This document shows, piece by piece, positions 1 through 25,370 of a stretch of DNA of 64,000 bases. A program made the position numbers and the translations under genes. The DNA lies in IMG/VR virus record IMGVR_UViG_3300043410_001471, positions 181,437 to 245,436 of that record; one strand, 5' to 3'. The notes beneath the pieces are model-generated. The model made no database searches. It was not told where the DNA came from and saw only the letters and a program-made list of their open reading frames with translations. Within the stretch, counting starts at the first letter, position 1, and the number at the start of each line of letters is the position of its first letter.

Positions 1-1727
1 TTATTAAAGAAGTTGCTTATTTAAGAGCTGAGAAACTTCCGTATTGTGTATCAACAATGAACACATATTTTACAGCATATGTTATCAAATGGTCTGATTT
101 AAAGTTCTATCCTAAAAATTATAAAGGCGAACTTCAACCACATGATATTCAAAATTCTCAATCAAATAGAAATCCATCAATTAATGTTAATTCGAAAAAG
201 TTACCTAAGAAATTAGCATATGGAATTCGTATTATGGGAGGTAATTCATCTTTTAATTATTTACCATTGGGTATTTTAGATGATACAATTGCACTTCAAG
301 CTGAAGATAGAGGACATGAGGGTGGTGTATTATTCTTTAATTATGATACTAAATGGCCTATTAAAATTTGGAAAAGAGCTTTACAAATTTTAGAAACGGA
401 AGTTATGGAATCCGAACAAACTTCCAATACAAAATTAATTATAAAATCTTTGAAATCATTGATGAATGATAAGAAAGTAAAGGAATTATCATTTGCGGAA
501 ATTGTTCCATTAGATATAAAGAAAGAAAAAGATAACGCTTATATTCCAATAGAATTGAAAGTATATCCTAATAGAACATTTCATAGAAGAGAAATTTTAG
601 GAATTAATAATAATGAAGATACTTGGCAAACTCACCAAAAAGCAGTAGCTGAAGCTGAAATTGTTTTAGATGCAATTTATGGTGTGGGTAACGATTATTT
701 TGATAAAATATATACACCAGTTGAAGGTAAAGCACTTTTTCAAGGTGAATTAACTATGTTAGCAAAACATGCAGCAGCTGGTCACAAAATGGAAAGATAT
801 GAAGAAGAACCAATTATGCTATGGTTAAGTTCTAGACAATATAGAAAAGATTCTTTGGACATTTATAGAGGATTTGATTGTTCAACATTAAATACTCGCA
901 TTGCTCAATATAAAAAATTAGTTGAATCCATTTCTAAAGATAAAAAATTAGATGAATTAGTTAAAACGGAAGTAGATTTTTTAACTTACATATCAGAATG
1001 TGTTAATATAGACTCATTTGAAACAACGATTGATAATGTTGTTGCTAAATATAAAGGAAAATCTACAACCAACATCAATGACCTTTCTATGACAAAAATG
1101 GATTCGGCTCTTATGATGGCTCAAATTATTAGAGATTATTTAGATACACGAACTGCTAGATTAACAAAAGATGTTGTAATTACAGTTGGTAATAAAGTAT
1201 TGAAAATGGCTTCTGAATTATTGGAGAATGAAAATGTTCAATCCGAATTAATTTCATCATCTACCGGTGCTAATGGAAGATATAAGCAATTTTATATGAA
1301 CTTAGAGGAGGAATTAAATGAATTACCATATGAAGAGGTTAGTGATGTTAAAGAAACATTGATTTCAAAAGCTAAACAGCAAATGGATTCATCTTTAAAT
1401 CCAAATGGAGATATTCCAATGATTGATAGAGATGAAAATGCAAAATCGGTTTTTAAAATTGTTATTGTAAATATTAACAAAGGTATCGGATTTGAAAAAG
1501 GGCATAAGAATGCTGGAATAGATAGTAAAGATATCGATAACTTTTTCTTACAATTTACAGGAGATAATGGATTCTGGTCTAATAAAAGAGATTTTGAACC
1601 AAACACATATTCAGCTGAATATTTAAATTCAATAAAAGAATTTATGAAAACTAATGAGTTGAATGATAATGATGAGTGGCAAGATGCATATCAAAATACT
1701 CGTAAATTTGTAACATCTGTTTGGTAA
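1..1727 (+). CDS. Large hypothetical protein, 5'-truncated by the window edge (>=574 aa)
   Basis: Frame is open from position 3 (ATT AAA GAA...) into the ATG at 57, so the true start probably lies upstream; no recognisable motif. Confidence 0.85.
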   Translation, partial: IKEVAYLRAEKLPYCVSTMNTYFTAYVIKWSDLKFYPKNYKGELQPHDIQNSQSNRNPSINVNSKKLPKKLAYGIRIMGGNSSFNYLPLGILDDTIALQAEDRGHEGGVLFFNYDTKWPIKIWKRALQILETEVMESEQTSNTKLIIKSLKSLMNDKKVKELSFAEIVPLDIKKEKDNAYIPIELKVYPNRTFHRREILGINNNEDTWQTHQKAVAEAEIVLDAIYGVGNDYFDKIYTPVEGKALFQGELTMLAKHAAAGHKMERYEEEPIMLWLSSRQYRKDSLDIYRGFDCSTLNTRIAQYKKLVESISKDKKLDELVKTEVDFLTYISECVNIDSFETTIDNVVAKYKGKSTTNINDLSMTKMDSALMMAQIIRDYLDTRTARLTKDVVITVGNKVLKMASELLENENVQSELISSSTGANGRYKQFYMNLEEELNELPYEEVSDVKETLISKAKQQMDSSLNPNGDIPMIDRDENAKSVFKIVIVNINKGIGFEKGHKNAGIDSKDIDNFFLQFTGDNGFWSNKRDFEPNTYSAEYLNSIKEFMKTNELNDNDEWQDAYQNTRKFVTSVW

Positions 1728-1745
1728 TATAATAGTAAAATTAAT

Positions 1746-2849
1746 ATGAATAAATTTTGGGATTCCGAAATAGGTAATTTTGATAAGAAGGTATTAGTAG
1801 TACCCAATTATACTCACTTTGGTGAAGGTAAAAATATAAACGCAGATTCGTTTGTGTTAGTTATGAAATCATTTTTAGATAACACTAATTATGATAATTT
1901 ACAATTTATAATTCCATATCCAAATGGATATATGCCAACGGATTTTATGAAGTATAAAAATGTAAAACTTATTAATATGGGGAATGTTTCTACATTTCCC
2001 CCATTAATGAGAATTCAATTCCCCGATTCTGCATTTAAAAAGATATTTTCTGAAGAAGGAATTGATATCATTTGGTCACATTTGCCGGAATGGACTAATC
2101 AATTATTAATCGTTCGTAGATACAACACAGTAACTCAACCTGTTTTGGGTTATTGCCATTGGTGGGAGATTCCTGAAAATGGTGCATATAATCATAATTC
2201 CTTTTGGGCAAATGTGCAAGGTATGTTGAAAATGAGTGTATGTGGGGTAAACTCACAATGGGTTAAGAATTTAGTATTAAAAAGAGCAAGTGGGTTTTTG
2301 AATAAAGAACAATTAGAAAAATTAGATACAATCATTCAGCCTTGGTATTTAGGATGCGATGAGTGGCAAGAAGGAATTGTAAAACCAAAAACTATTTTAT
2401 TCAATCATAGAGCAGATGGGTATACCGGTGCTGATTGGTTTTTTGAAGAGATGGATAAGTTGTGGGAACAAAGACAAGATTTTAAAGTTCTTACATCCAT
2501 AGCTAGTGTTTCAAAACCATATACGGAATCAATCCGACATCCTAATAGAGAACATTATAAACAAAATGTAGGAAGCGCTGATATTGGTGTTGGATGTTTT
2601 ACAAAATATTCAGCATGGAGTATGAGTACAACTGATGGGTTGAGTATGAATGTACCATATATTTTACCAAAAGGATTGTGCTATGAAGAAATGGTTGGAG
2701 AAGATTATCCATTACTTTATAATGGTAAAAAGGAATTTGTAAAAATGTTAGTAGATTACTTAGATGGTAAAATAGAAAGACCTAACACAAAAAAAATGGC
2801 TGAGAAGTTATATTGGAAACATAGTTTAGAAAATTGGAAAATTATATAA
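1746..2849 (+). CDS. GT-B fold (GT4-like) glycosyltransferase
   Basis: KTILFNHR strand and C-terminal 'SAWSMSTTDGLSMNVPYILP' resembling the GT4 ExFG..EAM..G.P donor-binding segment. Confidence 0.65.
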   Translation: MNKFWDSEIGNFDKKVLVVPNYTHFGEGKNINADSFVLVMKSFLDNTNYDNLQFIIPYPNGYMPTDFMKYKNVKLINMGNVSTFPPLMRIQFPDSAFKKIFSEEGIDIIWSHLPEWTNQLLIVRRYNTVTQPVLGYCHWWEIPENGAYNHNSFWANVQGMLKMSVCGVNSQWVKNLVLKRASGFLNKEQLEKLDTIIQPWYLGCDEWQEGIVKPKTILFNHRADGYTGADWFFEEMDKLWEQRQDFKVLTSIASVSKPYTESIRHPNREHYKQNVGSADIGVGCFTKYSAWSMSTTDGLSMNVPYILPKGLCYEEMVGEDYPLLYNGKKEFVKMLVDYLDGKIERPNTKKMAEKLYWKHSLENWKII

Positions 2850-2850
2850 T

Positions 2851-4077
2851 ATGAAATTTTGGGATACAGGTGAACAAACCAACACAGAAGTATTTGACTA
2901 CGATGAGATGAAAAAGAAGTTCATTGAGAACTTGGATTATCTTAAAGAAATGTCAGTAGAAGAGCAAACTCTATACAAAAAATGGATGGAGTGGAATGAA
3001 GATTTAATTGGTAATATGCGAAAATTACCTGCTTTACAACAACATTATGATTCGTTGTGGAAACCGACTGATATTATGGATAAGGAATTAACGATAAAAG
3101 AAATCGAAGGATTGCAACCATATATTGAAGTTGTAGAAGATAATCCAAAAGAATCTACTCGTTGGACTGAAATCCGTAGATTAATTCATACTATGGAGTT
3201 TCAGGCAAATCCAGGTCGTAATGTAAAGTGCTATGTTAAAGATAGAACAAGCGGAAAGATATTAGGACAAGTTTGTTTAGGTTCAGACATTACATCATTG
3301 GGTGTGAGAGATGCATACATTGGTTGGCAGAAAGAAGATAAGTTTCAAAATGGTAAATTGAATTGTACTACTATTGCAACTACAATCGTATCAACCCAAC
3401 CATTTGGATATAATTTCTTAGGTGGTAAGTTAATTGCAGCATTGGCAACTGCACCTGAAGTTAGAGATTACTGGCAAAAGAAATACAACAATCCATTGAT
3501 TGGAGTAGGTACAACATCATTGTATGGTATTCACTCACAATACAATGGTATTCCTCATTTCAAAACATTGGGAGAATCTAAAGGTAAGATTTCTACAAAG
3601 CCAGATGATAAGGTATACGACCCATGGCATCAATGGTTGAAAGAAAATCGTTCTGAATGGTATAAGCAACACATTATGGATGAGAGAGAACGAAATGGTG
3701 CTAATATGGGATACGATAGAAACGGACCTGTAAGTGGAATCAAACAAAAGATTATTCAGGCAATTTTTAAAGAGTTGGGAATCAAAGGAAACGCTTATGA
3801 CCACGGATTCCAAAGAGGTGTGTATTTCGCACAAATGTATGAGAATGGTAATGAGTTCCTTTGTTCTAAAATCGAAGAGAAGGATTTAGTTCTTAAAAAG
3901 AAATTCGCTGATGGTAATGATTATACTATCAAATGGTGGAAAGATAAAGCAATTAAGAGATATACTAAATTGCATGAAGAAGGTAAAATTAAACCCGAAG
4001 TTTTATTCTATATTGATGCAATTGGAATGACTTGGGAACAAATGAAAGAACATTACTTAAAAGAAGTGGGAAGATAA
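2851..4077 (+). CDS. DUF4338 / DruA-like protein
   Basis: Motifs PGRN, QPFGYNFLGGKLIAAL, TTSLYG..SQYN, GESKG typical of DUF4338. Confidence 0.7.
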   Translation: MKFWDTGEQTNTEVFDYDEMKKKFIENLDYLKEMSVEEQTLYKKWMEWNEDLIGNMRKLPALQQHYDSLWKPTDIMDKELTIKEIEGLQPYIEVVEDNPKESTRWTEIRRLIHTMEFQANPGRNVKCYVKDRTSGKILGQVCLGSDITSLGVRDAYIGWQKEDKFQNGKLNCTTIATTIVSTQPFGYNFLGGKLIAALATAPEVRDYWQKKYNNPLIGVGTTSLYGIHSQYNGIPHFKTLGESKGKISTKPDDKVYDPWHQWLKENRSEWYKQHIMDERERNGANMGYDRNGPVSGIKQKIIQAIFKELGIKGNAYDHGFQRGVYFAQMYENGNEFLCSKIEEKDLVLKKKFADGNDYTIKWWKDKAIKRYTKLHEEGKIKPEVLFYIDAIGMTWEQMKEHYLKEVGR

Positions 4078-4080
4078 AAT

Positions 4081-6642
4081 ATGTATCAAAATATATACTA
4101 CGAAAGAAGCAAGAATTTAATTCATCTATGGGATGATACCAATGGATACCAAACATTTCCATACCGAAAATATGCCTACAAAAAAGACCCATATGGACAG
4201 CATCGTTCAATGTATGGGGATAAGTTATCTCGTATTTCAAAGTGGGAAAAGGATGAGGCCGAAGATTTATTCGAATCGGATGTACCAGAAACAACGAGAG
4301 TATTGGTAGATATCTATGATAATGATTTACCATCAAAAGGACATACAGTATTAACATTTGACATTGAGGTAGAAATGATATCAGGTCTACCAAACACACG
4401 AGAAGCTCAAAACGAAATCACAGCAATCGCAGCACACGATTCTATTACAAAAGAATATGAAGTGTTCGTATTAGATAAAGAAAGAAAAGTTAAAAACAAT
4501 GCTACTAATTTTAGTAAAAACGGCAGAGAGGTTAAAGTACACATATTTGACAACGAAAGGAATTTATTATTTGCATTTCTTAATTATTACCAACAAGTTG
4601 ACCCGACTATTCTAACGGGTTGGAACATTGATTTTTTCGATATTCCATATCTTTACAATCGTATTAAGAATGTTTGTGGAGAGGGACATGCTAAGAGATT
4701 ATCTCGTATCGGAGAAGCATTCTGGTCACCATATAGAGAGAAGTTTAGTTTTGGTGGTGTGAGTGTATTGGATTACATCAATTTGTATAAAACATACACA
4801 TATACATTGGAAGCATCTTATACATTGAACTACATCGCTACCAAAGAATTGGGTAGAGGTAAGGTGGAGTATGAGGGAAGTTTGGATGATTTATTTGTAA
4901 ACGATTTGGAGAAATTCATTGAGTATAACATTGTCGATGTGGAGTTGGTTGTAGCAATGGATGCCAAATTACAATTCATTGAATTATGTAGAGCCGTTTG
5001 TCACGCTGGATTTGTTCCATATGAAGATTACATATTTTCATCAAAGTGGTTAGAAGGAGCTTGTTTAGGATATCTTAAAAAGAAAGGATTGGTAGCAACC
5101 AATAAACCAAAAGATAGAAAGGAAAGAATGCAAGCTCTTAGAGATAATAACGAAGAGAAATTCATTGGAGCATATGTAAAAGAACCTATCGTTGGTAAGT
5201 ATGATTGGATTTATGATTTGGACTTAACATCTCTATATCCATCAATCATTATGACTTTGAATATCAGTCCCGAAACAAAGATTGGTAAGATTCAGAATTG
5301 GGATGCTGAAGCAAATATCAGAGGGTTAGATACTACATACAAAGTAGTTGGTAAAGATGGTGATACTTATGAATATACGACTCAGGAACTAAAGGAAGTT
5401 ATTAAGGATAGTAATTTAGGTGTTGCGGCAAATGGAGTTCTCTATTCACAAGATTCACCGGGTTTGATTGCCGATATCTTAAATGATTGGTTTCAAAAGC
5501 GTGTTGAGTTCCGTAAATTAGAAAAGAAATATGGTACGGAAGGTGATACTGAAAAGTATGAATTCTATGCTAAAAGACAGCTAGTACAAAAGATTCTTTT
5601 GAACTCAATGTATGGTGTATTGGGTTTACCAGCATTTCGATTCTATGATGTGGATAACGCTGAAGCAGTAACCCTAACAGGTCAAACTGTTATTAAGAAA
5701 ACAGCAGAGATGGCAAACATCAAATATTGGAAAGAACTCGGAACTAAAGAGGATTATAATGTGTACATCGATACTGATTCCATTTATATGATGGCAGAAC
5801 CTTTGGTAAAACATAGATACCCTGAATATAAAACATTTGACCAAAATCGAATGGCTGAAGAGGTAAATACTATTGCCGAAGAAACTCAAACATTTTTGAA
5901 CACATTCTATGATATGTTGGCTGAAAAGTTCTTCTTTATTCCAAAAGAGAAACATAGATTTGAGATTAAGAAAGAATACATTAGTAAAGCAGGATTTTGG
6001 GTAGCAAAGAAGAGATATGCACAATGGATGATTCTAAAAAATGGTGTACCTTGTGATAAGTTGGATGTTAAAGGATTGGATGTGGTTCGTTCATCATTTC
6101 CTAAAGCATTTCAGGACTTTATGGCTAAAATGTTGAAAGATATTTTAATGGGTAAGGATAACGCATTTATGGATGAATCTTTATTGGATTTCAAAAAGAA
6201 TATGATTAATCTACCTGTAAACAAAATAGCAAAGGGTGGAGCAATTAAGGAGTTAAGTAAGTATGATAATGGTAGTTGGAGAAAAGATGGTGGAGAAGCT
6301 ATCGCATCATTTGAAAAGGGAACACCTGCACACGTTAAAGCTGGAATCACTTACAATCGATTATTAAAATTCTTCAATTGTCCATTTAAGCATGAACCAA
6401 TTAGAGATGGTGATAAAGTAAAGTGGGTATATCTTAAAACAAATCCATTGGGATTAGATACTGTTGCATTTAAGGATTATAATGACCCAAAAGAGATTAT
6501 GGATTTCGTAGAACAATATGTTGATAGAGATATGATTTATAAAGCAGAGTTGGAAAACAAAGTAGATGATTTCTATAACGCCTTAAAATGGAGTAAAGCA
6601 TCAACCGAAGCACAAACCGCTAAAAAGTTTTTTAGTTTTTAA
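4081..6642 (+). CDS. Family B DNA polymerase with 3'-5' exonuclease
   Basis: ExoI FDIEV, ExoII GWNIDFFD, polB motifs DLTSLYPS, KILLNSMYG, YIDTDS. Confidence 0.97.
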   Translation: MYQNIYYERSKNLIHLWDDTNGYQTFPYRKYAYKKDPYGQHRSMYGDKLSRISKWEKDEAEDLFESDVPETTRVLVDIYDNDLPSKGHTVLTFDIEVEMISGLPNTREAQNEITAIAAHDSITKEYEVFVLDKERKVKNNATNFSKNGREVKVHIFDNERNLLFAFLNYYQQVDPTILTGWNIDFFDIPYLYNRIKNVCGEGHAKRLSRIGEAFWSPYREKFSFGGVSVLDYINLYKTYTYTLEASYTLNYIATKELGRGKVEYEGSLDDLFVNDLEKFIEYNIVDVELVVAMDAKLQFIELCRAVCHAGFVPYEDYIFSSKWLEGACLGYLKKKGLVATNKPKDRKERMQALRDNNEEKFIGAYVKEPIVGKYDWIYDLDLTSLYPSIIMTLNISPETKIGKIQNWDAEANIRGLDTTYKVVGKDGDTYEYTTQELKEVIKDSNLGVAANGVLYSQDSPGLIADILNDWFQKRVEFRKLEKKYGTEGDTEKYEFYAKRQLVQKILLNSMYGVLGLPAFRFYDVDNAEAVTLTGQTVIKKTAEMANIKYWKELGTKEDYNVYIDTDSIYMMAEPLVKHRYPEYKTFDQNRMAEEVNTIAEETQTFLNTFYDMLAEKFFFIPKEKHRFEIKKEYISKAGFWVAKKRYAQWMILKNGVPCDKLDVKGLDVVRSSFPKAFQDFMAKMLKDILMGKDNAFMDESLLDFKKNMINLPVNKIAKGGAIKELSKYDNGSWRKDGGEAIASFEKGTPAHVKAGITYNRLLKFFNCPFKHEPIRDGDKVKWVYLKTNPLGLDTVAFKDYNDPKEIMDFVEQYVDRDMIYKAELENKVDDFYNALKWSKASTEAQTAKKFFSF

Positions 6643-6643: not shown

Positions 6644-7402
6644 ATGAAAGGATTAAAATTTTGGAAACCCATATCATTTGATGTTACATCATTTAGATGG
6701 AAATTGAATGAGAGAAAAGGAAGGAGATTTCAAGGTTCAGGTTCAGATAATTCAAATAAGAATGTATACACTTACAACGAACTTGGATTTAGAGGTGATT
6801 CATTTTTAAAAACTGGTTATAAAATTATGAGTGTGGGATGTTCTCACACCGAAGGTATAGGTGTAAATGATGATGAAACTTGGTCGCATTATTTATCAGA
6901 AATGATAGATAGTGGAGTAGATTTAAATTTCGGGCATAGTGGTAGAAGTAATGATTATATAGCAAGAACTATATTAACATTTACTGATAAAGTAAAACCG
7001 GATTTAGTATTGGCGATGTATAGTTATCCATCTCGACGAGAATATTATAAATCAGATGGTGGTATTGAACCATTTGCTTTAAATCCTTGGGGATATTATA
7101 AAGAACATCCGGATGGTATAGGTGAATTTCAAATGTTAGAAAAATTATCAAATGAAGAAGATGATTATATCAATTGGTACAAAAATCATTTGCTAATAAC
7201 ATATTATTTGAAATCAAAAAATATTCCATTTATTTGGAATGGGACATTTGTGAACACCGAATATACAGATGATAATCGATTTGATGGGGAATATAAACAA
7301 TATAGTGATACACATCAGCATGCTACATCGGAAGAAAATAAAAATTATGCAGAAAATTTATATAATCACATAAAAAGACTTGGTATTATCAAAAATTTAT
7401 AG
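6644..7402 (+). CDS. SGNH/GDSL-hydrolase-like protein
   Basis: Block I GCSHTEG, GRSN, C-terminal D..H. Confidence 0.6.
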   Translation: MKGLKFWKPISFDVTSFRWKLNERKGRRFQGSGSDNSNKNVYTYNELGFRGDSFLKTGYKIMSVGCSHTEGIGVNDDETWSHYLSEMIDSGVDLNFGHSGRSNDYIARTILTFTDKVKPDLVLAMYSYPSRREYYKSDGGIEPFALNPWGYYKEHPDGIGEFQMLEKLSNEEDDYINWYKNHLLITYYLKSKNIPFIWNGTFVNTEYTDDNRFDGEYKQYSDTHQHATSEENKNYAENLYNHIKRLGIIKNL

Positions 7403-7445: not shown

Positions 7446-8159
7446 ATGAACAAAAACAATCTATTACGATTTATCCAAAAGTATTCATTAGGTGGGGTAA
7501 TCGAATCGGTAGCATGGAACGCTGAAGGTAATAAGTTATCAGTTCGTTTCATTTCGGATGACAAGACTATGTTAGGTGAAGTGGATTTTGATGGTTTCAC
7601 ATCAACACCATTTAACATCGGTATTTACACAACTTCTTTATTAAAGAATTTAGTGGGAATTTTAGACAGTGATATCAATTTAAAAGTAGATTCAGTTGGA
7701 GATAAGGCGACTGTATTAAAGTTATCTTCAGATGAAACTGAAACATCTTATCAATTAGCAGATTTGGGAGTTATTCCATCTGTACCTGATTTGAAACAAA
7801 TGCCTGAATTTGGTATTGGTATTGAAATGGCATCTAATATGATTGATAAATTTATCAAAGCAAAAGGTGCATTATCCGATATCGATACATTCACTGTATT
7901 TACTGAAGGTGGTGATTTGAAAATGGCTATTGGTTATTCTTCAATCTCTACAAATAGAGTAACATTTACGGCAACTAAAGGGTTCGATGGTGAAGTAAAA
8001 CCAATTTCATTCTCAGCGAAGTATTTGAAAGAAATCTTAACAGCAAACAAAGAAGCAACTACTGCAAAGTTAAAAGTTTCAACTGATGGTTTAGCGCATG
8101 TTGAATTTAAGATTGATGAATTTACTTGTAAATATTATTTAGTTGAAATCTCAAATTAA
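7446..8159 (+). CDS. Sliding clamp (PCNA/gp45-like)
   Basis: 237 aa, FSAKYLKEIL motif, located between DNA polymerase and clamp-loader genes. Confidence 0.8.
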   Translation: MNKNNLLRFIQKYSLGGVIESVAWNAEGNKLSVRFISDDKTMLGEVDFDGFTSTPFNIGIYTTSLLKNLVGILDSDINLKVDSVGDKATVLKLSSDETETSYQLADLGVIPSVPDLKQMPEFGIGIEMASNMIDKFIKAKGALSDIDTFTVFTEGGDLKMAIGYSSISTNRVTFTATKGFDGEVKPISFSAKYLKEILTANKEATTAKLKVSTDGLAHVEFKIDEFTCKYYLVEISN

Positions 8160-8163: not shown

Positions 8164-8424
8164 ATGGAAGAGAAATTAGAACAACCTGTTGATATTGTAG
8201 ATGCGGAGTGGTGTTTTCAATTCTTTGATAACGAACCAGTTGTATTTGCATATTCTAACGAAGGGCAAGAAGAAGCTTCCCCATTAGTTCTACAAATTCA
8301 ATCGGTAGAGGGGCAGGGACTGCACTTCAAACACAATGGTATGGAATTTAAAATATTCCCAAGACCAGTTAGTGAAGAAACAAAATTAGAAAGAGTAAAA
8401 TCAAAAGAAAATGACATTCGATAA
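8164..8424 (+). CDS. Hypothetical acidic protein
   Basis: ORF filling the gap; ATG at 8164 just after the clamp stop preferred over 8143. Confidence 0.7.
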   Translation: MEEKLEQPVDIVDAEWCFQFFDNEPVVFAYSNEGQEEASPLVLQIQSVEGQGLHFKHNGMEFKIFPRPVSEETKLERVKSKENDIR

Positions 8425-8710
8425 TTTAATAGAAAATGTATCTCAATGGGCATCTGATAAAGATATCCTAAAGAAAGAAAACGCACCTAAACAATTGTTA
8501 AAGGTGTTAGAAGAAGTTGGCGAAACCGCAGGTGCTTTATTGAAATCCAAAGATGAGGAAATTAAAGATGGTATTGGTGATTCATTTGTAACACTTATCA
8601 TTTTAGCTAAACAATTAGGTTTAGAGCCTGCAGATTGTTTAGAAGCAGCATGGAATGAAATTAAAGATAGAACGGGTAAGACTGTAAATGGCGTATTCGT
8701 AAAAAATTAG
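8411..8710 (+). CDS. MazG-like NTP pyrophosphohydrolase
   Basis: EEVGE...DGIGD acidic helix motifs. Confidence 0.85.
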   Translation: MTFDNLIENVSQWASDKDILKKENAPKQLLKVLEEVGETAGALLKSKDEEIKDGIGDSFVTLIILAKQLGLEPADCLEAAWNEIKDRTGKTVNGVFVKN

Positions 8711-8712: not shown

Positions 8713-9663
8713 ATGAATATTTGGGTATCGGAATGGGCTTCAAATGAAATGAAAATGCTGGAATACATAAAGTTTCCAGCAACATTTCATTTAAATAGAA
8801 ACGGATTACCAATTTATAATTGTAATTATGGAGAGTATGATGCGTTTATCTGGTCTACAAAAGAATTTAAACCAGATGAGGTAACATTTTTATTAGAAAA
8901 TAATTGTAAAGTATTTCTTTTTTGTATTCATGGTGATGGGTTTCATTTAGAAAATCGTAAAGAGTTTTTAAAATACGATAATTTTAAAATTATTACCGGT
9001 GCAATAGATGGTGGACTGGCTGGACAAATATTGGAATATCCAAACACATATTTGGATGTTACATTAGTATTAGCTTATTATTATACTCTATTTGCGGTTG
9101 AACTCTATGAATTTCATAAAACAACTTCAAATAAATCATATAAAGTTGGGTTATGGCATAGAGAGGGATATAGACATGATAGAGATTTTTTAATAAAAAA
9201 TATTAGAAATTCCAAACACTCCGAATCATTTAAAATATTAACCCAAAAAGAATTGGATATATATGATGTCCTTATAGGGCGTGATATTGAAAGTAGTTAT
9301 AAACAATGGTCTGTGCAATATTTTAATTTTATGGATTGTGAATTATTTCTAAGTTTCGAATCAGCAAATACGGATTCAACACCATTCTTTTGTTCTGATA
9401 AAATATTGAAAGGATTTATTTTAGAAGCATTGGGTATACCAACTATTCATGTATTACAATCTACTCTTAAGTCTGAATTAGAAAAATATGGGTTTGATAT
9501 AATAGGATATACATCATATCAGGGTGAAATTGTTAATAAATTGATTGATATGAATGTAGATGAATTAAAAGAAAGAAACATCAAATCAAATAATTTGAAG
9601 ATACTTGAAGATATGATAAAGGGTGGACAAATTTTAAACGAATTAAAAAAAATAATGATATGA
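8713..9663 (+). CDS. Hypothetical, GT10 (fucosyltransferase)-like C-terminus
   Basis: FLSFESANTDSTPFFCSDK resembles GT10 FxLxFENS..YxTEK. Confidence 0.4.
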   Translation: MNIWVSEWASNEMKMLEYIKFPATFHLNRNGLPIYNCNYGEYDAFIWSTKEFKPDEVTFLLENNCKVFLFCIHGDGFHLENRKEFLKYDNFKIITGAIDGGLAGQILEYPNTYLDVTLVLAYYYTLFAVELYEFHKTTSNKSYKVGLWHREGYRHDRDFLIKNIRNSKHSESFKILTQKELDIYDVLIGRDIESSYKQWSVQYFNFMDCELFLSFESANTDSTPFFCSDKILKGFILEALGIPTIHVLQSTLKSELEKYGFDIIGYTSYQGEIVNKLIDMNVDELKERNIKSNNLKILEDMIKGGQILNELKKIMI

Positions 9664-10607
9664 GTTTTTTCGCAAACGATATTAGTAAAAGAGAGCATAG
9701 TTTGTGGGTGGAAAAATATCGACCACAAACACTTGCCGATTATGTTGGTAATGAAACCATCAAAGAAACTATTCAACAATATTTGGATAATAATGATATC
9801 CCACATTTATTGTTGTATGGAAAAGCCGGTACTGGTAAAACTACATTAGCAAAGTTAATCGTAAACACAATTAAATGTGACCATATGATTATCAATGCAT
9901 CGGATGAGAACAATGTGGATACAGTCCGTAACAAAGTAAAGAACTTCGCATCATCGGTGGGTTTTGCAGGATTTAAGGTTGTAATTTTGGATGAGTTTGA
10001 TTATATGACTCCAAACGCACAGGCAATCCTAAGAAATTTAATGGAAACATTCTCTAAACATTGTAGATTCATTTTGACTTGTAACTACATTGAGAAGATT
10101 ATTGACCCGATTCAAAGTAGATGTCAATCATTTGCAATCACACCTCCAACTAAAAAGGATGTGGCAGTGCAAGTTAGTAAGATTTTGGATAAAGAAGGTA
10201 TTAAGTACGATTTAAAAAATGTAGCTGATATTATCAGTTCATATTACCCAGATATTCGTAGAATCTTAAATACTTGCCAATTACAATCAGCTAAAGGTGA
10301 ACTGAAAGTGGATAAAGCTATTATGGTTGAATCCGATTTCAAAAATAAATTAGTAGATGCATTGAAGGGTTCGGATGATAAGAGAAATCTTTATTTAAAA
10401 ATAAGACAAATGGTGTTGGATAATCAAATGAATGATTATACCGAAATGTATACATATCTTTATGATAAAGTAGATGATTACGCAGGTGGTAACACAGCAA
10501 ATATCATTTTAGCAATTGCAGATTCTCAAGCAAAAGATGCATTGGTTGTTGATAAAGAAATTGTATTCGCATCATTATTAATTCAAATTATAAACATTAT
10601 AAGATAA
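9660..10607 (+). CDS. Clamp loader AAA+ subunit (RFC small subunit/gp44-like)
   Basis: WVEKYRP, Walker A GKAGTGKTT, DEFD, SRC motif. Confidence 0.95.
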   Translation: MSFFANDISKREHSLWVEKYRPQTLADYVGNETIKETIQQYLDNNDIPHLLLYGKAGTGKTTLAKLIVNTIKCDHMIINASDENNVDTVRNKVKNFASSVGFAGFKVVILDEFDYMTPNAQAILRNLMETFSKHCRFILTCNYIEKIIDPIQSRCQSFAITPPTKKDVAVQVSKILDKEGIKYDLKNVADIISSYYPDIRRILNTCQLQSAKGELKVDKAIMVESDFKNKLVDALKGSDDKRNLYLKIRQMVLDNQMNDYTEMYTYLYDKVDDYAGGNTANIILAIADSQAKDALVVDKEIVFASLLIQIINIIR

Positions 10608-10846
10608 TGGAACAAGGATTACCAATGGGTATCAATTTAAATGATGCCAGAGATATGGATTGTGAATGTGGAAATAAAACATTTATGCCAGGTTATAGAT
10701 TTAAAAAATTAAGTAAAATAATGACTGGTCAGCCACAAGATACAATTATTCCAATAGAAATGTATTTATGTACACAATGTGGTAAACCATTACAGGAATT
10801 ACTACCAAAAGAATTACAAGATAAACAATCATCAATAGGATTATAA
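10607..10846 (+). CDS. Small Zn-ribbon protein
   Basis: CECG ... CTQCG. Confidence 0.7.
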   Translation: MEQGLPMGINLNDARDMDCECGNKTFMPGYRFKKLSKIMTGQPQDTIIPIEMYLCTQCGKPLQELLPKELQDKQSSIGL

Positions 10847-11298
10847 TGGCAGGAAAATCATTATTTGACCATATTAAAGCAATTACAAACGAACAAGACC
10901 CGAAGTACTTTGAAAAATTATCCGATGAAGATAAGAAATCTTGGAGTAACTTTATGATTAATCGTTTTCTTTCAATGAATCCTGAATGGGTAGAATTGAT
11001 TGCAACAATACTACCTTTGACTCAAACACTTGAACCAAAGGATATGTATAAATTGTATATCAACGCTATTCCAAAAGGTAGATACTTTTTAAAATATATG
11101 AAAGGCAAATCTGCCGAAAAGTATGAAGATTTTATAATAGAATTGATTAAAAAGGAATACGATTGTTCAGAATCCCAAGCTATTGAATATTTGGATATAT
11201 TATATTCTAATAGAGAGGGTAGAGAAAATATAAAGTACATTTGTGAAAAATATGGTACTGATAAAAAGCAAATTACAAAATTAAAATTAAAAATATAA
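10846..11298 (+). CDS. Clamp loader small subunit (gp62-like)
   Basis: FMINRFLSM motif; position after the RFC gene. Confidence 0.7.
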   Translation: MAGKSLFDHIKAITNEQDPKYFEKLSDEDKKSWSNFMINRFLSMNPEWVELIATILPLTQTLEPKDMYKLYINAIPKGRYFLKYMKGKSAEKYEDFIIELIKKEYDCSESQAIEYLDILYSNREGRENIKYICEKYGTDKKQITKLKLKI

Positions 11299-12533
11299 TG
11301 AATAAGAGTTTTTGTATATTACCCTTTATACATTTGAATGGTTATATGGATGGGACAGCAAAACCATGCTGCGATTCGCAAAAAGCATTTACTGATATCG
11401 ATTTAAAGGGAACATCAATCGAAGAAGCATTTAATTCAGAAGAATATAAAAAACTTCGATTGGATATGGTAAACGATGTACAAAACGAATATTGTAGTGC
11501 TTGTTATGATTTGGAAAAGCAAGATATAAAATCATCTAGAATTAGATGGAATGAACATCATGCATCGAGATTAAATGATATTGACAAGAAATATGTAAAT
11601 AACGATAAATTTGATGGTACAGTAGCTACGGAATTTGTATCATTGGATTTAAGACCTTCTAATATATGTAATTTTAAATGTAGAACTTGCAACGATTCAT
11701 ATTCAACTAAATGGCAAGAAGAGAAAGAAGATTTCTATAAAACAAATATGGGAGTTCTTGCATTCGGTGAAGAAAAAGTCGAATCATTAAATAAAGTGGA
11801 TTTCAAATTAAATGAGGAATCTATGAAAAATATAGAAGTATTGTATTTTGCAGGAGGTGAACCATTTGTATTGGAAGAGCATTTTAAATTATTAGATTCT
11901 TTGAAAAACAAAAAAGATATTTCTTTAATGTACAATACGAATTTTAGTATTTTAAAATATAAAGGAAAAACTATATTTGAATATTTGAAAGATTTCAGAA
12001 AAGTACACTTTTCAATATCAATCGATGGGTTGGGCGAAATTGGAGAATATGTAAGGACTGGGTTCGATACGAAAGTTTTTAAAAAGAATATGATGGTGTT
12101 GAAATGGGCTATGACTCAATATAAAAATATTACATATGACTTTCAATATACATGCTCATTATTAAATGCATATGATTTTTTTGATTTTATAGAGGAATTG
12201 GATGAATCACACGAATTGATTAATTTTCATTATGTTCGTTTTCCTTGGTGGTATAACCCTGTAAATTTTGATGAACATAGAACAAAATTGATAACATTAT
12301 ATACAGATAAATTAAATACAATTAAGTCTCAAAAATTAAAAGAGTATTTAGAAAAGTATATAAACTATCTGAAAAGTGCCAAAGTTACGAGTTGGGATAG
12401 AGTTAATTCTAAAAAATATTTGATAGCACATACTACACATGGTATGATATTTAATGATACATTTTTACCTGAAAAACTTTCATTTATAGATGATATTATT
12501 AACGAAGATACTCGAAAAAATCCAATCATTTAA
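11298..12533 (+). CDS. Radical SAM protein with N-terminal SPASM/twitch-like Cys motifs
   Basis: CNFKCRTC (CxxxCxxC), FCILPF..PCC, CSAC, FAGGEP. Confidence 0.88.
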   Translation: MNKSFCILPFIHLNGYMDGTAKPCCDSQKAFTDIDLKGTSIEEAFNSEEYKKLRLDMVNDVQNEYCSACYDLEKQDIKSSRIRWNEHHASRLNDIDKKYVNNDKFDGTVATEFVSLDLRPSNICNFKCRTCNDSYSTKWQEEKEDFYKTNMGVLAFGEEKVESLNKVDFKLNEESMKNIEVLYFAGGEPFVLEEHFKLLDSLKNKKDISLMYNTNFSILKYKGKTIFEYLKDFRKVHFSISIDGLGEIGEYVRTGFDTKVFKKNMMVLKWAMTQYKNITYDFQYTCSLLNAYDFFDFIEELDESHELINFHYVRFPWWYNPVNFDEHRTKLITLYTDKLNTIKSQKLKEYLEKYINYLKSAKVTSWDRVNSKKYLIAHTTHGMIFNDTFLPEKLSFIDDIINEDTRKNPII

Positions 12534-13699: not shown

Positions 13700-15082
13700 A
13701 TGGCAAAGAAGAAGATTCTGTTACTATCGGATGACTTACGAATGGCTAGTGGTATAGCCAATGTTTCCAAACAATTAGTATTAGGTACAGTTGATAAATA
13801 TGATTGGGTACAATTGGGAGCAGCAATTAAACATCCTGAAGCTGGAAAAGTTTTGGATTTAAATGAAAGTGTTAGAGAACAAACCGGTGTAAAGGATGCT
13901 GAAGTAAAAATCTATCCATTTGATGGATATGGTAATGCTGATGTGATTAGACAATTGTTGATGGTTGAAAAGCCAGATGCAATCTTACACTTTACTGACC
14001 CGAGATATTGGATTTGGTTATATGAAATGGAGCACGAAGTTCGTCAATCAGTACCTTTATTCTTTTATCATATTTGGGATGATTTGCCAGACCCAAAATA
14101 TAATAGAGATTATTACGAAAGTTGCGATTGGATTGGAACTATTTCAAAACAAACTTATGGTATTACTAAAAGAGTTTGGGGATGGGATAGAGAAAAACAT
14201 TGGACTAAGCCGGAAGATTGGCAAGTAAGTTATGTACCACATGGTATTAATTCGGATTTGTATAAGCCGGTAGATGTACCTGCTGATTTTAAGAAAAGTA
14301 TATTTGGTGATAAAGAATACGAATTTGTTCTTTATTGGTCAAATCGTAACATCAGAAGAAAACAACCTTTAGATGTAATATTTGCATTTGATAAATTTGT
14401 TCAAGCTTTGCCAGAAGAAAAAAGAGATAAAGTTTGTTTACTAATGCATACTGAACCAGTACAAGAGCATGGAACGGATTTACCACGTAGTATTGAAGAA
14501 TGTTGCTCATCTGAAACAAATGTAATATTTGCACCAAACAAATATTCTGAAATAGAATTAAATTATTTTTACAATATTGCAGATGTAACAATTAACATAG
14601 CATCTAATGAAGGATTTGGATTAGCAACCGCAGAATCAGTAATGGCTGGAACACCGATTATTGTAAATGTAACAGGTGGGTTGCAAGACCAATGTGGATT
14701 CAGAGATAAAGGTACGGGTAAATTATTAACGGCTGAAGATTATGTTGAGATTGGTTCTTTGCATGATAGACATAAGAAAGCAGGTGTAGTTTGGGGAGAT
14801 TGGGTTAAACCAATTTGGCCAGTTCGTTCAACAACAGGTTCAGTTCCTACACCATATATCTTTGATGATAGAGTTGATTTTGAAGATGTAGCTCCTTTAA
14901 TTATGGATTGGTATATGACTCCAAAAGAAGATAGAAAATCCATTGGATTAAAAGGTAGAAAGCATTTCTTAGGTGAAGGTAAATTAAGTAAAGAGGCAAT
15001 GTGTGATGCATTAGTTGAGGGAATGGAAGGCGCATTCGCAAATTGGAAACCAAAACAAAAATTTAAGTTAATAGAGTTATAG
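13700..15082 (+). CDS. GT4 glycosyltransferase
   Basis: KILLLSDD..SGIA, NEGFGLATAESVMAGTP. Confidence 0.9.
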   Translation: MAKKKILLLSDDLRMASGIANVSKQLVLGTVDKYDWVQLGAAIKHPEAGKVLDLNESVREQTGVKDAEVKIYPFDGYGNADVIRQLLMVEKPDAILHFTDPRYWIWLYEMEHEVRQSVPLFFYHIWDDLPDPKYNRDYYESCDWIGTISKQTYGITKRVWGWDREKHWTKPEDWQVSYVPHGINSDLYKPVDVPADFKKSIFGDKEYEFVLYWSNRNIRRKQPLDVIFAFDKFVQALPEEKRDKVCLLMHTEPVQEHGTDLPRSIEECCSSETNVIFAPNKYSEIELNYFYNIADVTINIASNEGFGLATAESVMAGTPIIVNVTGGLQDQCGFRDKGTGKLLTAEDYVEIGSLHDRHKKAGVVWGDWVKPIWPVRSTTGSVPTPYIFDDRVDFEDVAPLIMDWYMTPKEDRKSIGLKGRKHFLGEGKLSKEAMCDALVEGMEGAFANWKPKQKFKLIEL

Positions 15083-15083
15083 T

Positions 15084-16349
15084 ATGAAACCAACATTAGT
15101 ATTTCAAGCACCAGTAGCAACAAGAAGTGGATATGGTGACCACGCGAGAGATTTGTTGCATTCACTTTATAAATTGGATAAGTTTAATATCAAAGTAATC
15201 AGTACTCGTTGGGGACAAACTCCAATGGATGCACTGAATTATGATAACGAATTTCATAAGTGGATTATAGAAAATATAACTCCACAAATTACAGAAAAGC
15301 CAGATATCTACATTCAAGTTACAGTTCCAAATGAATTTCAACCATTAGGATTTTATAATATTGGAATTACTGCCGCAATCGAAACCACACATTGTGCATT
15401 AGATTGGGTACATGGTTGTAATAGAATGGATTTAATCATAGTTCCATCCGAACATTCTAAAGATAGTTTAGTTAAAACTATTTACAATGAACAAGATAAA
15501 AGAACAGGTCAACTGATAGGACAGCATAAAATTACAAAACCAGTTGAAGTTTTATTTGAAGGATTTAATGAAAATTTTGGAAGTGATGAAGTTGCATATG
15601 TAGAACAATTAGACCAAATCAAAGAAGATTTTGCTTTCTTATTCGTAGGACATTGGTTGAGAGGAGATTTAGGAGAAGATAGAAAGAATGTAGGTATGAT
15701 GATTAAAACATTTGCAACTGCATTTAAAAAAGAAAATGTGAAGCCGGCATTGGTATTAAAAACATCTTCGGCCGGATTTAGTATAATTGATAGGGAAAAT
15801 ACAATTAAAAAAATTAGAGAGGTATTGGGTAAAGATTATAAATCAGTACCAATTTATCTTTTACATGGTGATTTAACGGAAGTTGAAATGAATGGATTAT
15901 ATGAACATCCAAAAGTGAAGGCTATGTTAAATTTCACAAAAGGTGAAGGATTTGGTAGACCCCTATTAGAATTCAGTTTGACGGGTAAACCTGTAATAGT
16001 ATCTAATTGGAGTGGGCATCTGGATTTCTTAAAAGAAGGCGCAGTATTGTTGGAAGGTGAATTGAAAAATGTACACGAATCAGCGGCTGACCAATTCTTA
16101 TTAAAAGAATCACAATGGTTTAATGTAAATGTTTCAAAAGCATTGCCTGTAATCAAAGATGTTTATAAAAATTATGATAAATACAAAGTAGCATCATCTA
16201 AATTGGGTAAGCAAAATAAACAAAATTTTAGTTTATCAAAAATGACCGAATTGTTTGATGGTATTTTAAATCAGTATGGTATTTATACTAAGATACAACC
16301 AAAGTTTCAACAACTTCAGTTACCTAAATTGAAAATGTTAAATAAATAA
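15084..16349 (+). CDS. GT4 glycosyltransferase
   Basis: SGYG, GEGFGRPLLEFSLTGKP. Confidence 0.9.
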   Translation: MKPTLVFQAPVATRSGYGDHARDLLHSLYKLDKFNIKVISTRWGQTPMDALNYDNEFHKWIIENITPQITEKPDIYIQVTVPNEFQPLGFYNIGITAAIETTHCALDWVHGCNRMDLIIVPSEHSKDSLVKTIYNEQDKRTGQLIGQHKITKPVEVLFEGFNENFGSDEVAYVEQLDQIKEDFAFLFVGHWLRGDLGEDRKNVGMMIKTFATAFKKENVKPALVLKTSSAGFSIIDRENTIKKIREVLGKDYKSVPIYLLHGDLTEVEMNGLYEHPKVKAMLNFTKGEGFGRPLLEFSLTGKPVIVSNWSGHLDFLKEGAVLLEGELKNVHESAADQFLLKESQWFNVNVSKALPVIKDVYKNYDKYKVASSKLGKQNKQNFSLSKMTELFDGILNQYGIYTKIQPKFQQLQLPKLKMLNK

Positions 16350-16822
16350 TGCCAGTATACAATCCAATATATCGTAGATTCATAGATGATAGGAATATAG
16401 TAATGCCAAATAGAATGGTACGAAATAGTTTTTATTTAATAAAAGAATACGAATATGTAGATGGCACTAAAGGTAAATATAGTGAAGCAAACGCTCCCAT
16501 TATATTTACCTTATTTGTATCTCAATCGAAAGATATAGTACATGCAATAAAAGTATCAAATGTTAGACCTGATTTAATTCAGAAATTTTTTGGTAAGTTT
16601 GCTAATACTGAAACTGAAGAATTAGAAATGAAAGGAGGAGCTAAAGCCTTTTATGAAAAGGTTGTTTCGAAAGTTCCTATAATTACAAACGATTCATATA
16701 GAACTTATAAATTGAGTGGATTTGGTAGAGTTTTTAATTTGGATATGGATGTGAATAAATTGACACCATCGAATAAAACGATAACTGGAATAAATTCAAA
16801 ATCTCAAATAAAGAATAGATAA
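16349..16822 (+). CDS. Hypothetical protein
   Basis: Translationally coupled ORF; no motif. Confidence 0.8.
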   Translation: MPVYNPIYRRFIDDRNIVMPNRMVRNSFYLIKEYEYVDGTKGKYSEANAPIIFTLFVSQSKDIVHAIKVSNVRPDLIQKFFGKFANTETEELEMKGGAKAFYEKVVSKVPIITNDSYRTYKLSGFGRVFNLDMDVNKLTPSNKTITGINSKSQIKNR

Positions 16823-16824
16823 TT

Positions 16825-17235
16825 ATGACATCAAAAGAATATGTTATTTGGCTTAAAGGTTTTGTAGAAGCCTGTCACGAATACGCACCAACTCCAAAAC
16901 AATGGGATGCGTTAAAAGATAAATTAGAAGAAGTTAAAGATGATACAACATCATCGCCTTTTCCGTTTGGAGTTCCTAATACGGCACCGATTGTAACATT
17001 ACCATATATTACACCGGGTCCATCAACAGACCCATATAATCCATATAAAATAACTTGTAGTAGTGGTTCATTTGGAACAATTACAACAACACCTGGAACG
17101 GGATATATTACAACATATAATCCTGTACAATTTGGTAGTGGTTCAATATATAATGTATCAACATCAATGACACGATTTCCAATATCAGGTAGTAGTGTAA
17201 GTTACACAAATGGTGGAAACGATATAAAAGATTAA
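16825..17235 (+). CDS. Hypothetical protein with Pro/Thr/Ser-rich C-terminus
   Basis: ORF in operon; low-complexity tail. Confidence 0.75.
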   Translation: MTSKEYVIWLKGFVEACHEYAPTPKQWDALKDKLEEVKDDTTSSPFPFGVPNTAPIVTLPYITPGPSTDPYNPYKITCSSGSFGTITTTPGTGYITTYNPVQFGSGSIYNVSTSMTRFPISGSSVSYTNGGNDIKD

Positions 17236-17236
17236 A

Positions 17237-24995: not shown

Positions 24996-25369
24996 AATTC
25001 GAAGTAACTAATCCAAAGGCGTGGAAAGCTGTAAATGAAAAAAACATTCCAATGTCTCATAAAATTAAAGTATATGAGAAATTAGGAGGAGCATATCGTT
25101 TAGGTGAAAATGGGGGTGAGCAGGTATTTAACAAAATGACAGAATTGTTAAAACATAAAATAAATGAAGGACCTGAAACACAAGACCACGAAGTATCCAT
25201 GGCAGGTGGTCAATTGGATGATATTATAAGAAACGCAACCGAACTAAAAGGTAAGGTTGGTGAACAAGAAATGAATTTACCTGGTTGGATTCAAGACCAC
25301 ATATCTCAAGCTCAAAATTTTATTAATCAAGCTAATACTGGCTTTCATAAATTAGATGGAGGTGAATAA
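24992..25369 (+). CDS. Hypothetical, possibly virion-associated (DHEVSMA motif)
   Basis: INEG then DHEVSMA; ATATTTATA motif 46 nt upstream. Confidence 0.6.
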   Translation: MKFEVTNPKAWKAVNEKNIPMSHKIKVYEKLGGAYRLGENGGEQVFNKMTELLKHKINEGPETQDHEVSMAGGQLDDIIRNATELKGKVGEQEMNLPGWIQDHISQAQNFINQANTGFHKLDGGE

Positions 25370-25370
25370 T

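What the first reader, a model, noticed from the sequence alone, without database searches (positions are those of the whole stretch)
1..6642. Glycosyltransferase + DUF4338 + large orphan tightly linked to DNA polymerase: candidate DNA-hypermodification locus
Seen: GT-B, DUF4338 and polymerase genes are separated by 1-3 nt, apart from the main GT cluster. Known: T-even phages glycosylate DNA with GT-B enzymes; DUF4338 is DruA of the Druantia defence system, whose other genes are absent here. Inference: a base-modification pathway (sugar and/or acyl transfer) protecting the phage genome.
Basis: inference. Interest (0 to 1): 0.6.

Follow-up and report, generated by a model that had tools for sequence, protein, structure and literature searches.

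The report
Mom-like enzymes embedded in phage replisome genes
In an uncultured 245-kb T4-like aquatic phage, a sugar transferase and a Mom-like acyltransferase (a DruA homologue) sit inside the DNA-polymerase/clamp gene block, next to two genuine Mom DNA-modification genes; this makes a replication-linked DNA-modification module plausible but unproven.

Summary
Window 1746-2849 encodes a divergent GT-B glycosyltransferase, seen by fold only. Window 2851-4077 encodes a full-length DruA/DUF4338 homologue, and 4081-6642 a T4-type PolB. The gaps between them are 1-3 nt. Such gaps are the genome norm (49% of gaps are 3 nt or less), so spacing alone means nothing.

Synteny is the real signal. In 80 related viral contigs the usual order is RNR, thioredoxin, Mom, Mom, a variable slot, GT-B, PolB, sliding clamp, DruA-like, clamp loader. 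In three cyanophages the DruA-like gene lies between the clamp-loader genes gp44 and gp62.

Evidence against a single pathway: the thymidylate synthase is canonical, and GT-B also occurs alone in two complete 30-kb phages.

Verdict: a replication-coupled DNA-modification module is plausible for the GNAT enzymes and uncertain for GT-B. No chemistry has been shown.

The parts
1..1727 (+). Orphan of 584 aa. The true start is 28 nt upstream of the window, at genome position 181409. It occupies a variable slot between Mom2 and GT-B.
   Evidence: ORF. No Pfam, PHROG, NCBIfam or PADLOC hit. Only 31 homologues were found. It is unrelated to the large proteins in the same slot of L008 and L010. In other loci the slot is empty or holds other genes. 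There is a weak AIPR-like lead only (0.88, 128 shared features).
1746..2849 (+). Divergent GT4-like GT-B glycosyltransferase of 367 aa. It has a disordered N-terminal M-N-K-F-W-D peptide.
   Evidence: The AF2 model has pLDDT 87.2. Foldseek PDB and BFVD matches are to GT-B enzymes. The word search found 626 homologues, none carrying a Pfam domain. There is no homologue in 50,697 isolate phage records. Synteny with PolB is shown. The N-terminal motif is shown.
2851..4077 (+). DruA/DUF4338-family GNAT of 408 aa. Its fold is closest to Mu Mom. It has an invariant N-terminal M-x-F-W-D peptide.
4081..6642 (+). T4-type family B DNA polymerase of 853 aa. Its C-terminal tail ends K-K-F-F-S-F.
   Evidence: PF00136, PF03104 and phrog_262 E 3e-183. 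It is 50% identical to the Microcystis phage Mel-JY01 PolB. The C-terminal [KQ]-F-F-x-F motif is conserved in the relatives.
6644..7402 (+). Protein of 252 aa with unknown function. Its N-terminus is M-K-G-L-K-F-W. It is found only in the window's own subclade.
   Evidence: ORF. No family hit. Present only in L016 and L024. The motif is shown.
7446..8159 (+). gp45-like sliding clamp of 237 aa.
   Evidence: Weak PCNA_C hit at E 0.0024. Atlas feature hits to sliding-clamp clusters carrying gp45-slide_C and DNA_PPF (0.94, 195-202 shared features). It folded with pLDDT 91 when given as three copies. It always lies between PolB and the clamp loader.
8411..8710 (+). MazG-like nucleotide pyrophosphohydrolase of 99 aa.
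   Evidence: PF12643 at E 2e-5 (25.2 bits, below its 27-bit cut-off) and PF03819 at E 1.4e-4.
9660..10607 (+). Clamp-loader AAA+ subunit, gp44-like. Its N-terminus is M-S-F-F.
   Evidence: phrog_168 E 8e-88, with AAA and DNA_pol3_delta2 domains. The N-terminal motif is shown.
10846..11298 (+). Clamp-loader A subunit, gp62-like.
   Evidence: PF16790 E 9e-10.

Best explanation
The region is the replication-gene block of a complete, uncultured 245-kb T4-like aquatic phage. Nucleic-acid-modifying enzymes are built into this block.

Two Mom-family genes lie just upstream of the window. In phage Mu, Mom transfers glycine from Gly-tRNA to N6 of adenine in double-stranded DNA. A third GNAT, the DruA homologue, has a predicted fold closest to Mom. 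It most likely also acylates or aminoacylates a nucleic-acid substrate.

The enzymes carry short disordered terminal F-W peptides that resemble the polymerase's C-terminal tail and the clamp loader's N-terminus. I infer that these peptides tether them to the sliding clamp, so that newly made phage DNA is modified at or behind the fork and is protected from host nucleases.

The GT-B enzyme may add a sugar to DNA. It works independently of the GNATs, and its target is the least certain part.

Shown: gene identities, folds, catalytic-residue conservation in the Moms, synteny, and motif distribution.

Inferred: the substrates, clamp tethering, and any modification of virion DNA.
For: 1. Two PF25680 Mom genes lie at genome 179773-181324 (E about 1e-44; phrog_1384). 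They keep Mu Mom residues H58, Y59, R111, S124, D149, Y159 and W181. R111 and S124 are essential in Mu (PMC13219725).
3. Synteny. The order Mom, Mom, variable slot, GT-B, PolB, clamp, DruA-like, clamp loader (or a rearrangement of it) is found in nearly all of the 80 GT-B loci that have enough flank (and 21-24). In cyanophages S-SM2, S-CAM9 and S-SSM7 the DruA-like gene lies between gp44 and gp62.
4. The DruA-like protein is 60-93% identical across the clade. That is as conserved as PolB or more so, which is unlike an accessory gene.
5. Terminal F-W. Of 316 ORFs in the genome, F-W occurs in the first 10 residues only in GT-B, DruA-like and p252, and in the last 6 residues only in Mom2. It is present in 44 of 44 DruA-like homologues and in 45 of 89 Mom homologues. 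PolB always ends [KQ]-F-F-x-F, and the clamp loader often starts M-x-F-F. The peptides are predicted to be disordered.
6. The complex test of a clamp trimer with DruA-like residues 1-40 scored 0.48 against a best control of 0.01, giving the verdict 'weak support'. The mark was reached by 58 of 80 solved complexes and 2 of 110 mismatched pairs. At 0.60 or under, only 7 of the solved complexes reached it, as did both of the mismatches that passed. Partner pLDDT was at least 38, and contact agreement at least 42%.
Against: - No chemistry has been observed.
- The Mom residue R151 is K or G in the two paralogues.
- ThyA is canonical, there is no ThyX, and there is no hydroxymethylase to create a sugar acceptor.
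- GT-B occurs alone in two complete 30-kb phages without Mom, DruA, TS or a visible clamp, yet keeps the N-terminal F-W.
- Most clade members' GT-B lacks the N-terminal peptide.
- Cyanophage and pelagiphage DruA-likes lack F-W.
- The complex score is in the range the tool calls more often wrong than right.
- The T4 alpha-GT/gp45 precedent was not reproduced (10.64898/2025.12.06.692756).
- Dense packing makes adjacency cheap.
Confidence: 0.4

Rival explanations
1. The GT-B enzyme is not a DNA enzyme. It is a self-sufficient accessory glycosyltransferase acting on a host or virion glycan, protein or small molecule. It happens to be fixed beside a variable-gene slot upstream of PolB.
For: Homologues of 53% identity stand alone, on the opposite strand to their neighbours, in two complete 30-kb phages with no Mom, DruA, TS or PolB nearby. 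The best non-family viral structural matches are Arthrobacter-phage glycosyltransferases (E 3e-18 and 2e-17) and generic GT4 enzymes, not AGT-like DNA glucosyltransferases (E about 1e-7, TM 0.43-0.50). The genome has its own sugar-activation and GT cluster. There is no hydroxymethyl-pyrimidine pathway.
Against: In 51-100%-identity relatives the gene is almost always directly upstream of, or beside, PolB and apart from the sugar cluster. A phage DNA-pathway GT (HY126, 9iqz) is among the top PDB matches (PMC13326640). Part of the family carries the same terminal F-W peptide as the DruA-like protein.
Confidence: 0.35
2. The DruA-like GNAT acetylates a protein rather than DNA. The target would be a replisome component or a host factor, so the enzyme regulates replication or host takeover.
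For: Most GNATs are protein or small-molecule acyltransferases. All weak Foldseek matches are to protein acetyltransferases such as the p300 HAT and Naa enzymes. The gene is linked to the clamp and clamp-loader genes. The predicted contact with the clamp could equally reflect a substrate relation.
Against: Mom is the single best structural match and covers 171 of its 202 residues. The gene co-occurs with two Mom genes throughout the clade.
Confidence: 0.15
3. The phage DruA homologue is a counter-defence decoy that interferes with host Druantia type I by mimicking DruA.
For: It is a full-length homologue of DruA, and no other Druantia gene is present. Phages do sometimes capture defence components.
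Against: It is among the most conserved proteins of the replication block (60-93% identity) and holds a fixed position between replisome genes in three phage lineages. Counter-defence genes are usually variable and accessory. Identity to bacterial DruA is low.
Confidence: 0.05
4. There is no functional link. The genes are neighbours only because the genome is densely packed and transcribed from one strand.
For: 49% of gaps are 3 nt or less and 95% of the + strand is coding. The closest isolate, Mel-JY01, has other genes upstream of PolB.
Against: The same genes stay together through three different rearrangements and down to 51% identity. The terminal F-W peptides are confined to this locus in a 316-ORF genome.
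Confidence: 0.05

Closest known systems
Phage Mu Mom (PF25680), a Gly-tRNA-dependent DNA N6-adenine aminoacyltransferase (PMC13219725)
   Same: Two true family members lie directly upstream of the window, with the essential residues R111 and S124 kept. The DruA-like protein has a GNAT core, and Mom is its best structural match.
   Different: There are two paralogues, 43% identical to each other, rather than one gene. They sit in the early/replication block rather than in a late, Com-controlled operon. One has a C-terminal tail ending in F-W. The DruA-like protein is not a sequence member of the Mom family. It is twice as long, with extra N- and C-terminal helical parts.
DruA (DUF4338, PF14236) of the Druantia type I defence system
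   Same: Homology is significant and runs the full length. The length is similar, at about 407 aa.
   Different: The gene is phage-encoded and stands alone. No DruB-E genes are present, and the DruE-type MZB domain is absent. It is embedded in replisome genes. DruA-like proteins in six Synechococcus phages were already noted from structure by the Phold preprint (10.1101/2025.08.05.668817), without a function or a context.
T4 alpha- and beta-glucosyltransferases, and the HY126/RB69 5-hydroxycytosine arabinosyltransferases (PMC13326640)
   Same: All share the GT-B fold. The HY126 GT 9iqz is a top-10 structural match. All are encoded in T4-like genomes.
   Different: There is no Pfam AGT/BGT hit. 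No hydroxymethylase was found (only a canonical ThyA, no ThyX), and no cytosine-hydroxylase gene was looked for. The canonical GT4 E-x7-E motif reads S-x7-D by my own reading of the alignment, which I did not verify by superposition.
C-terminal sliding-clamp-binding tail of T4/RB69 DNA polymerase (from my own knowledge of the RB69 clamp-peptide structure)
   Same: PolB here ends in a conserved aromatic tail, [KQ]-F-F-x-F. The F-W peptides are terminal, disordered and aromatic like it.
   Different: Some of the peptides are N-terminal. Binding has not been shown. The only test gave weak support.

Membership tests
DruA / DUF4338 (PF14236) | Sequence match to the family profile above the curated cut-off | tested here: met
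   72.6 bits against a cut-off of 27, E 4e-20, covering profile positions 15-295 of 297. PADLOC PDLC00002 gives E 1e-20.
Druantia type I system | DruA encoded together with DruB-D and the DruE helicase | tested here: not met
   No MZB/DUF1998 domain is found anywhere in the complete 245-kb genome. The neighbours are replisome genes. DruB-D were not searched individually.
Mom family (PF25680): the two upstream genes | Profile match above the cut-off, with the essential residues R111 and S124 kept | tested here: met
   About 150 bits each against a cut-off of 27.1. H58, Y59, R111, S124, D149, Y159 and W181 are kept. R151 is K in one paralogue and G in the other.
Mom family (PF25680): the DruA-like protein | Sequence or profile similarity to Mom | tested here: not met
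Mom-type activity (aminoacyl-tRNA-dependent DNA modification) | Transfer of an amino acid from charged tRNA to adenine in dsDNA | not testable with these tools
   This needs in vivo plasmid nucleoside LC-MS or in vitro assays, as in PMC13219725.
GT-B glycosyltransferase, GT4-like | Two Rossmann-like domains with the GT-B topology | tested here: met
   The model has pLDDT 87.2 and pTM 0.85. There are at least 500 Foldseek PDB matches at E 1e-3 or better, and all 50 rows shown are glycosyltransferases or sugar synthases. The best is MshA at TM 0.70.
GT-B glycosyltransferase, GT4-like | Family sequence signature (Glycos_transf_1 profile, E-x7-E motif) | tested here: not met
   No Pfam or NCBIfam hit even at E up to 10. 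The corresponding segment reads S-x7-D by my reading of the invariant columns, which is inference.
T-even DNA glucosyltransferases (AGT PF11440, BGT PF09198) | Family profile match, and a 5-hydroxymethylcytosine acceptor made by a TS-like hydroxymethylase | tested here: not met
   No profile hit. The only TS homologue scores as the thymidylate synthase equivalog (344.5 bits against a cut-off of 325). There is no ThyX.
Sliding-clamp client proteins | Terminal peptide that binds the clamp | tested here: inconclusive
   The motif is shared with the PolB tail and is confined to this locus. The complex score was 0.48 against a best control of 0.01, 'weak support', with the calibration counts given.

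The most novel reading that the evidence does not exclude
DruA-family proteins are Mom-like nucleic-acid-modifying GNATs that work at the replication fork. In these phages they, a Mom paralogue and a GT-B are clients of the sliding clamp through terminal F-W peptides, forming a replisome-tethered DNA-hypermodification machine. By extension, DruA in Druantia type I would write or read a DNA mark.
Probability: 0.2. Interest if true: 0.85.

Novelty: new variant of a known kind. Interest (0 to 1): 0.62.

Why it matters
Mom's chemistry, aminoacyl-tRNA-dependent DNA modification, was solved only recently and for a single gene in Mu. Here a large, abundant and entirely uncultured aquatic phage clade carries two Mom paralogues plus a third Mom-like GNAT. 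The word searches found 626 GT-B homologues and 3151 DruA-like homologues, and the GT-B family has no isolate. All of these genes are wired into the replisome genes.

If the DruA-like enzyme acts on DNA, that would give the first functional handle on DruA, the unexplained first gene of Druantia type I. If the terminal F-W peptides bind the clamp, that would be a clear case of DNA-modifying enzymes recruited as clamp clients. This idea was proposed for T4 alpha-GT and was recently disputed.

All four enzymes are small and can be expressed in E. coli. The published plasmid-nucleoside LC-MS assay can therefore test the question directly.

Tried and rejected
**Similarity searches**
- Megablast of the region against isolate phages found no match.
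- Sequence searches of GT-B, DruA-like and the clamp against PDB found nothing, whether run as single sequences or as profiles.
- hhalign of DruA-like against Mom profiles found nothing. The DruA-like alignment has low diversity, with Neff 1.7.
- Foldseek PDB for DruA-like gave only weak acetyltransferase rows. The wide VIA search was needed.

**The orphan**
- It has no family.
- It is unrelated to the large proteins in the same slot of other phages.
- The Atlas lead to AIPR is below the trust level.

**Other F-F/F-W-terminal ORFs in the genome**
- They are uninformative.

**Sequencing runs**
- Only DNA metagenomes kept as contigs are available, with no RNA and no raw long reads.
- Read laying was therefore not used. 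Neither expression nor base-calling anomalies could be examined.

**Searches not run**
- It returns no names or context.

**Ideas rejected**
- A T-even-style 5hmC glucosylation pathway: ThyA is canonical and there is no hydroxymethylase.
- GT-B acting on a Mom/DruA-made acceptor as an obligate pathway: GT-B occurs without them in complete small phages.
- The DruA-like gene as part of a Druantia system.

**Complex test**
- The result is 'weak support' only and is reported as such.


Full report
**What is there.**
The window is the last 64 kb of a complete 245,436-bp viral record with direct terminal repeats. About 95% of the + strand is coding and the GC content is about 31%. Positions 1-6642 hold four + strand ORFs.
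- An orphan ends at 1727. It really starts 28 nt before the window and is 584 aa long.
- 1746-2849 encodes 367 aa.
- 2851-4077 encodes 408 aa.
- 4081-6642 encodes 853 aa.

The gaps of 1 and 3 nt are real. However, half of all gaps in this genome are 3 nt or less (median 4 nt), so spacing alone is not evidence of coupling.

**Identities.**
The 853-aa protein is a T4-type family B polymerase. Its nearest isolate relative is the Microcystis phage Mel-JY01 PolB, at 50% identity.

The 408-aa protein is a full-length DruA/DUF4338 homologue. Pfam gives 72.6 bits and PADLOC gives E 1e-20.

The 367-aa protein has no sequence-level family at all. It does have 626 metagenomic homologues. With their alignment it folds confidently (pLDDT 87.2) into a GT-B glycosyltransferase. 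The closest solved structures are GT4 enzymes such as MshA and PimB'. The DNA-pathway glycosyltransferase of phage HY126 is also in the top ten (PMC13326640). Among viral models, generic and Arthrobacter-phage GTs match far better than AGT-like DNA glucosyltransferases. The family is absent from 50,697 isolate phage records.

The orphan has 31 homologues and no assignable family.

Two Mom-family genes lie immediately upstream of the window, at genome 179773-181324. They score about 150 bits each and are 43% identical to each other. They follow RNR, a 346-aa unknown and thioredoxin, and further upstream gp32, UvsX, a 5'-3' exonuclease and DnaB.

Mu Mom is now known to transfer glycine from Gly-tRNA(Gly) to N6 of adenine in dsDNA. 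[quoted passage not shown] Both paralogues keep H58, Y59, R111, S124, D149, Y159 and W181. R151 is not kept.

Downstream of PolB lie a 252-aa unknown, a gp45-like clamp, MazG, the clamp-loader subunits, a twitch radical-SAM protein and a PD-(D/E)XK nuclease. After these comes the separate sugar/GT cluster.

**Synteny.**
I fetched 80 viral contigs that carry a GT-B homologue of 51-100% identity. I then mapped the neighbours by tblastn. Three arrangements recur.
- Most contigs: RNR, Trx, Mom, Mom, a variable slot, GT-B, PolB, clamp, DruA-like, clamp loader.
- The window's clade: Mom, Mom, orphan, GT-B, DruA-like, PolB, clamp.
- A third group: a split PolB, then clamp, GT-B, DruA-like.

The same picture came from four independent metagenome look-ups. 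The slot between Mom2 and GT-B varies from 10 nt to more than 4 kb. The orphan therefore belongs to a variable slot and not to the conserved set.

The DruA-like protein is 60-93% identical across the clade. It is often more conserved than PolB.

The DruA-like gene occurs in 31 isolate phages. In cyanophages S-SM2, S-CAM9 and S-SSM7 it lies between the clamp-loader genes gp44 and gp62. In S-B68 and the pelagiphages it lies near gp46/47. Mel-JY01 lacks it.

**The DruA-like fold.**

The margin is about one Z unit, and profile-profile comparison finds nothing. This is therefore a lead, not membership. DUF4338 had already been called a GNAT (PMC10853773). DruA-like proteins had already been noted in six cyanophages.

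**A shared terminal peptide.**
GT-B starts M-N-K-F-W-D. DruA-like starts M-K-F-W-D. The 252-aa protein starts M-K-G-L-K-F-W. Mom2 ends K-F-W.

Among 316 ORFs in the genome, these are the only three with F-W in the first ten residues, and Mom2 is the only one with F-W in the last six. About 1.8 and 1.0 would be expected genome-wide by chance, and all four fall within six consecutive genes.

The motif is present in 44 of 44 DruA-like homologues. It is also present in 45 of 89 Mom homologues, which is about half and would fit one paralogue per phage. Both peptides lie in segments predicted to be disordered.

PolB always ends [KQ]-F-F-x-F. The clamp loader often begins M-x-F-F. From my own knowledge, T4/RB69 polymerases bind the clamp through such a C-terminal aromatic tail.

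I tested a clamp trimer against DruA-like residues 1-40. The score was 0.48 (runs 0.48, 0.52 and 0.48) against a best control of 0.01, and the verdict was 'weak support'. The mark was reached by 58 of 80 solved complexes and 2 of 110 mismatched pairs. At 0.60 or under, only 7 of the solved complexes reached it, as did both of the mismatches that passed. Partner pLDDT was at least 38, and contact agreement at least 42%.

Several points count against the idea.
- Most clade members' GT-B lacks the N-terminal peptide and has a different C-terminal tail.
- Cyanophage and pelagiphage DruA-likes lack the motif.
- The T4 alpha-GT/gp45 precedent was not reproduced in a 2025 preprint.

**Against a single pathway.**
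The only TS homologue (window 40554-41624) is a canonical thymidylate synthase. There is no ThyX, no N6/N4 methyltransferase and no DruE-type domain.

Two complete phages of about 30 kb carry a 53%-identical GT-B on the strand opposite to their neighbours. These phages have Terminase_3, HNH and XkdF genes. Neither has Mom, DruA or TS. GT-B therefore does not depend on the GNATs for its substrate.

**Conclusion.**
The strongest case for DNA modification rests on the two Mom genes outside the window and on the Mom-like, replisome-embedded DruA homologue. The GT-B target remains open, and I put roughly one chance in three on DNA. No modification has been shown. Section the next steps lists the assays that would settle it.

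**Limits.**
- The available runs hold only contigs of DNA metagenomes, from freshwater and marine samples. Expression and base-level signals could not be examined, and read laying was not used.
- No alternative genetic code was used.

Noticed in passing
Just upstream of the window: genome 179773-180537 and 180521-181324 (L015:14774-15538 and 15522-16325): Two tandem, overlapping Mom-family genes with intact catalytic residues. They are 43% identical to each other. The second has a tail of about 26 residues ending in K-F-W.
   Followed up: yes
L015:14557-14790 (genome 179556-179789); in relatives, for example L033:4981-5184: A small ORF of 67-77 aa overlaps the start of Mom1. It has weak HTH DNA-binding hits (E 3e-5). 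In the main clade it ends N-E-F-W-S-G-S-L. Its position recalls Mu com overlapping mom, but it is not a zinc finger by any test run here.
   Followed up: partly
window 54466-63881: A predicted tmRNA plus 23 tRNA genes, including two tRNA-Gly(UCC), lie in a GC-richer tail of the genome. A Gly-tRNA supply could matter for Mom-type enzymes, but this is speculative.
   Followed up: no
window 13700-29309: A separate sugar cluster holds two GT4-like GTs (one with a weak 'GT4-conflict' hit), an NAD-dependent epimerase/dehydratase, a Glyco_trans_1_2 protein, a GHMP kinase and many unknown genes.
   Followed up: partly
window 11298-12533: A twitch-domain radical SAM/SPASM protein (NF033640, E 5e-81) lies between the clamp-loader genes and a PD-(D/E)XK nuclease. 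It is another candidate nucleic-acid-modifying or metabolite-modifying enzyme in the replication block.
   Followed up: no
L010:1545-6960, L026 and L028 (relatives): PolB is split into two or three pieces, with intervening ORFs, in one subclade. Nearby IMPDH genes show intein/Hint hits. This suggests introns, inteins or homing elements in the replication genes.
   Followed up: no
L061:9995-11119 and L059:594-1715: A GT-B homologue of 53% identity, with an N-terminal F-W, is present as a lone opposite-strand gene in two complete phages of about 30 kb that lack Mom, DruA and TS. This implies horizontal transfer of the GT as a self-sufficient unit.
   Followed up: yes
window 40554-41624: The thymidylate synthase is 356 aa and matches its profiles in two or three stretches. 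This suggests an insertion of about 45 residues near residues 207-254.
   Followed up: no
window 6644-7402: A 252-aa protein with an N-terminal K-F-W, no detectable family, and homologues only in the window's own subclade. It is inserted between PolB and the clamp gene.
   Followed up: partly
L068:13998-14270, L070:13055-13330 and L073:14585-15220 (also three Mom genes in L004): Some relatives carry a third, more divergent Mom-like gene inside the PolB, clamp and clamp-loader stretch.
   Followed up: no
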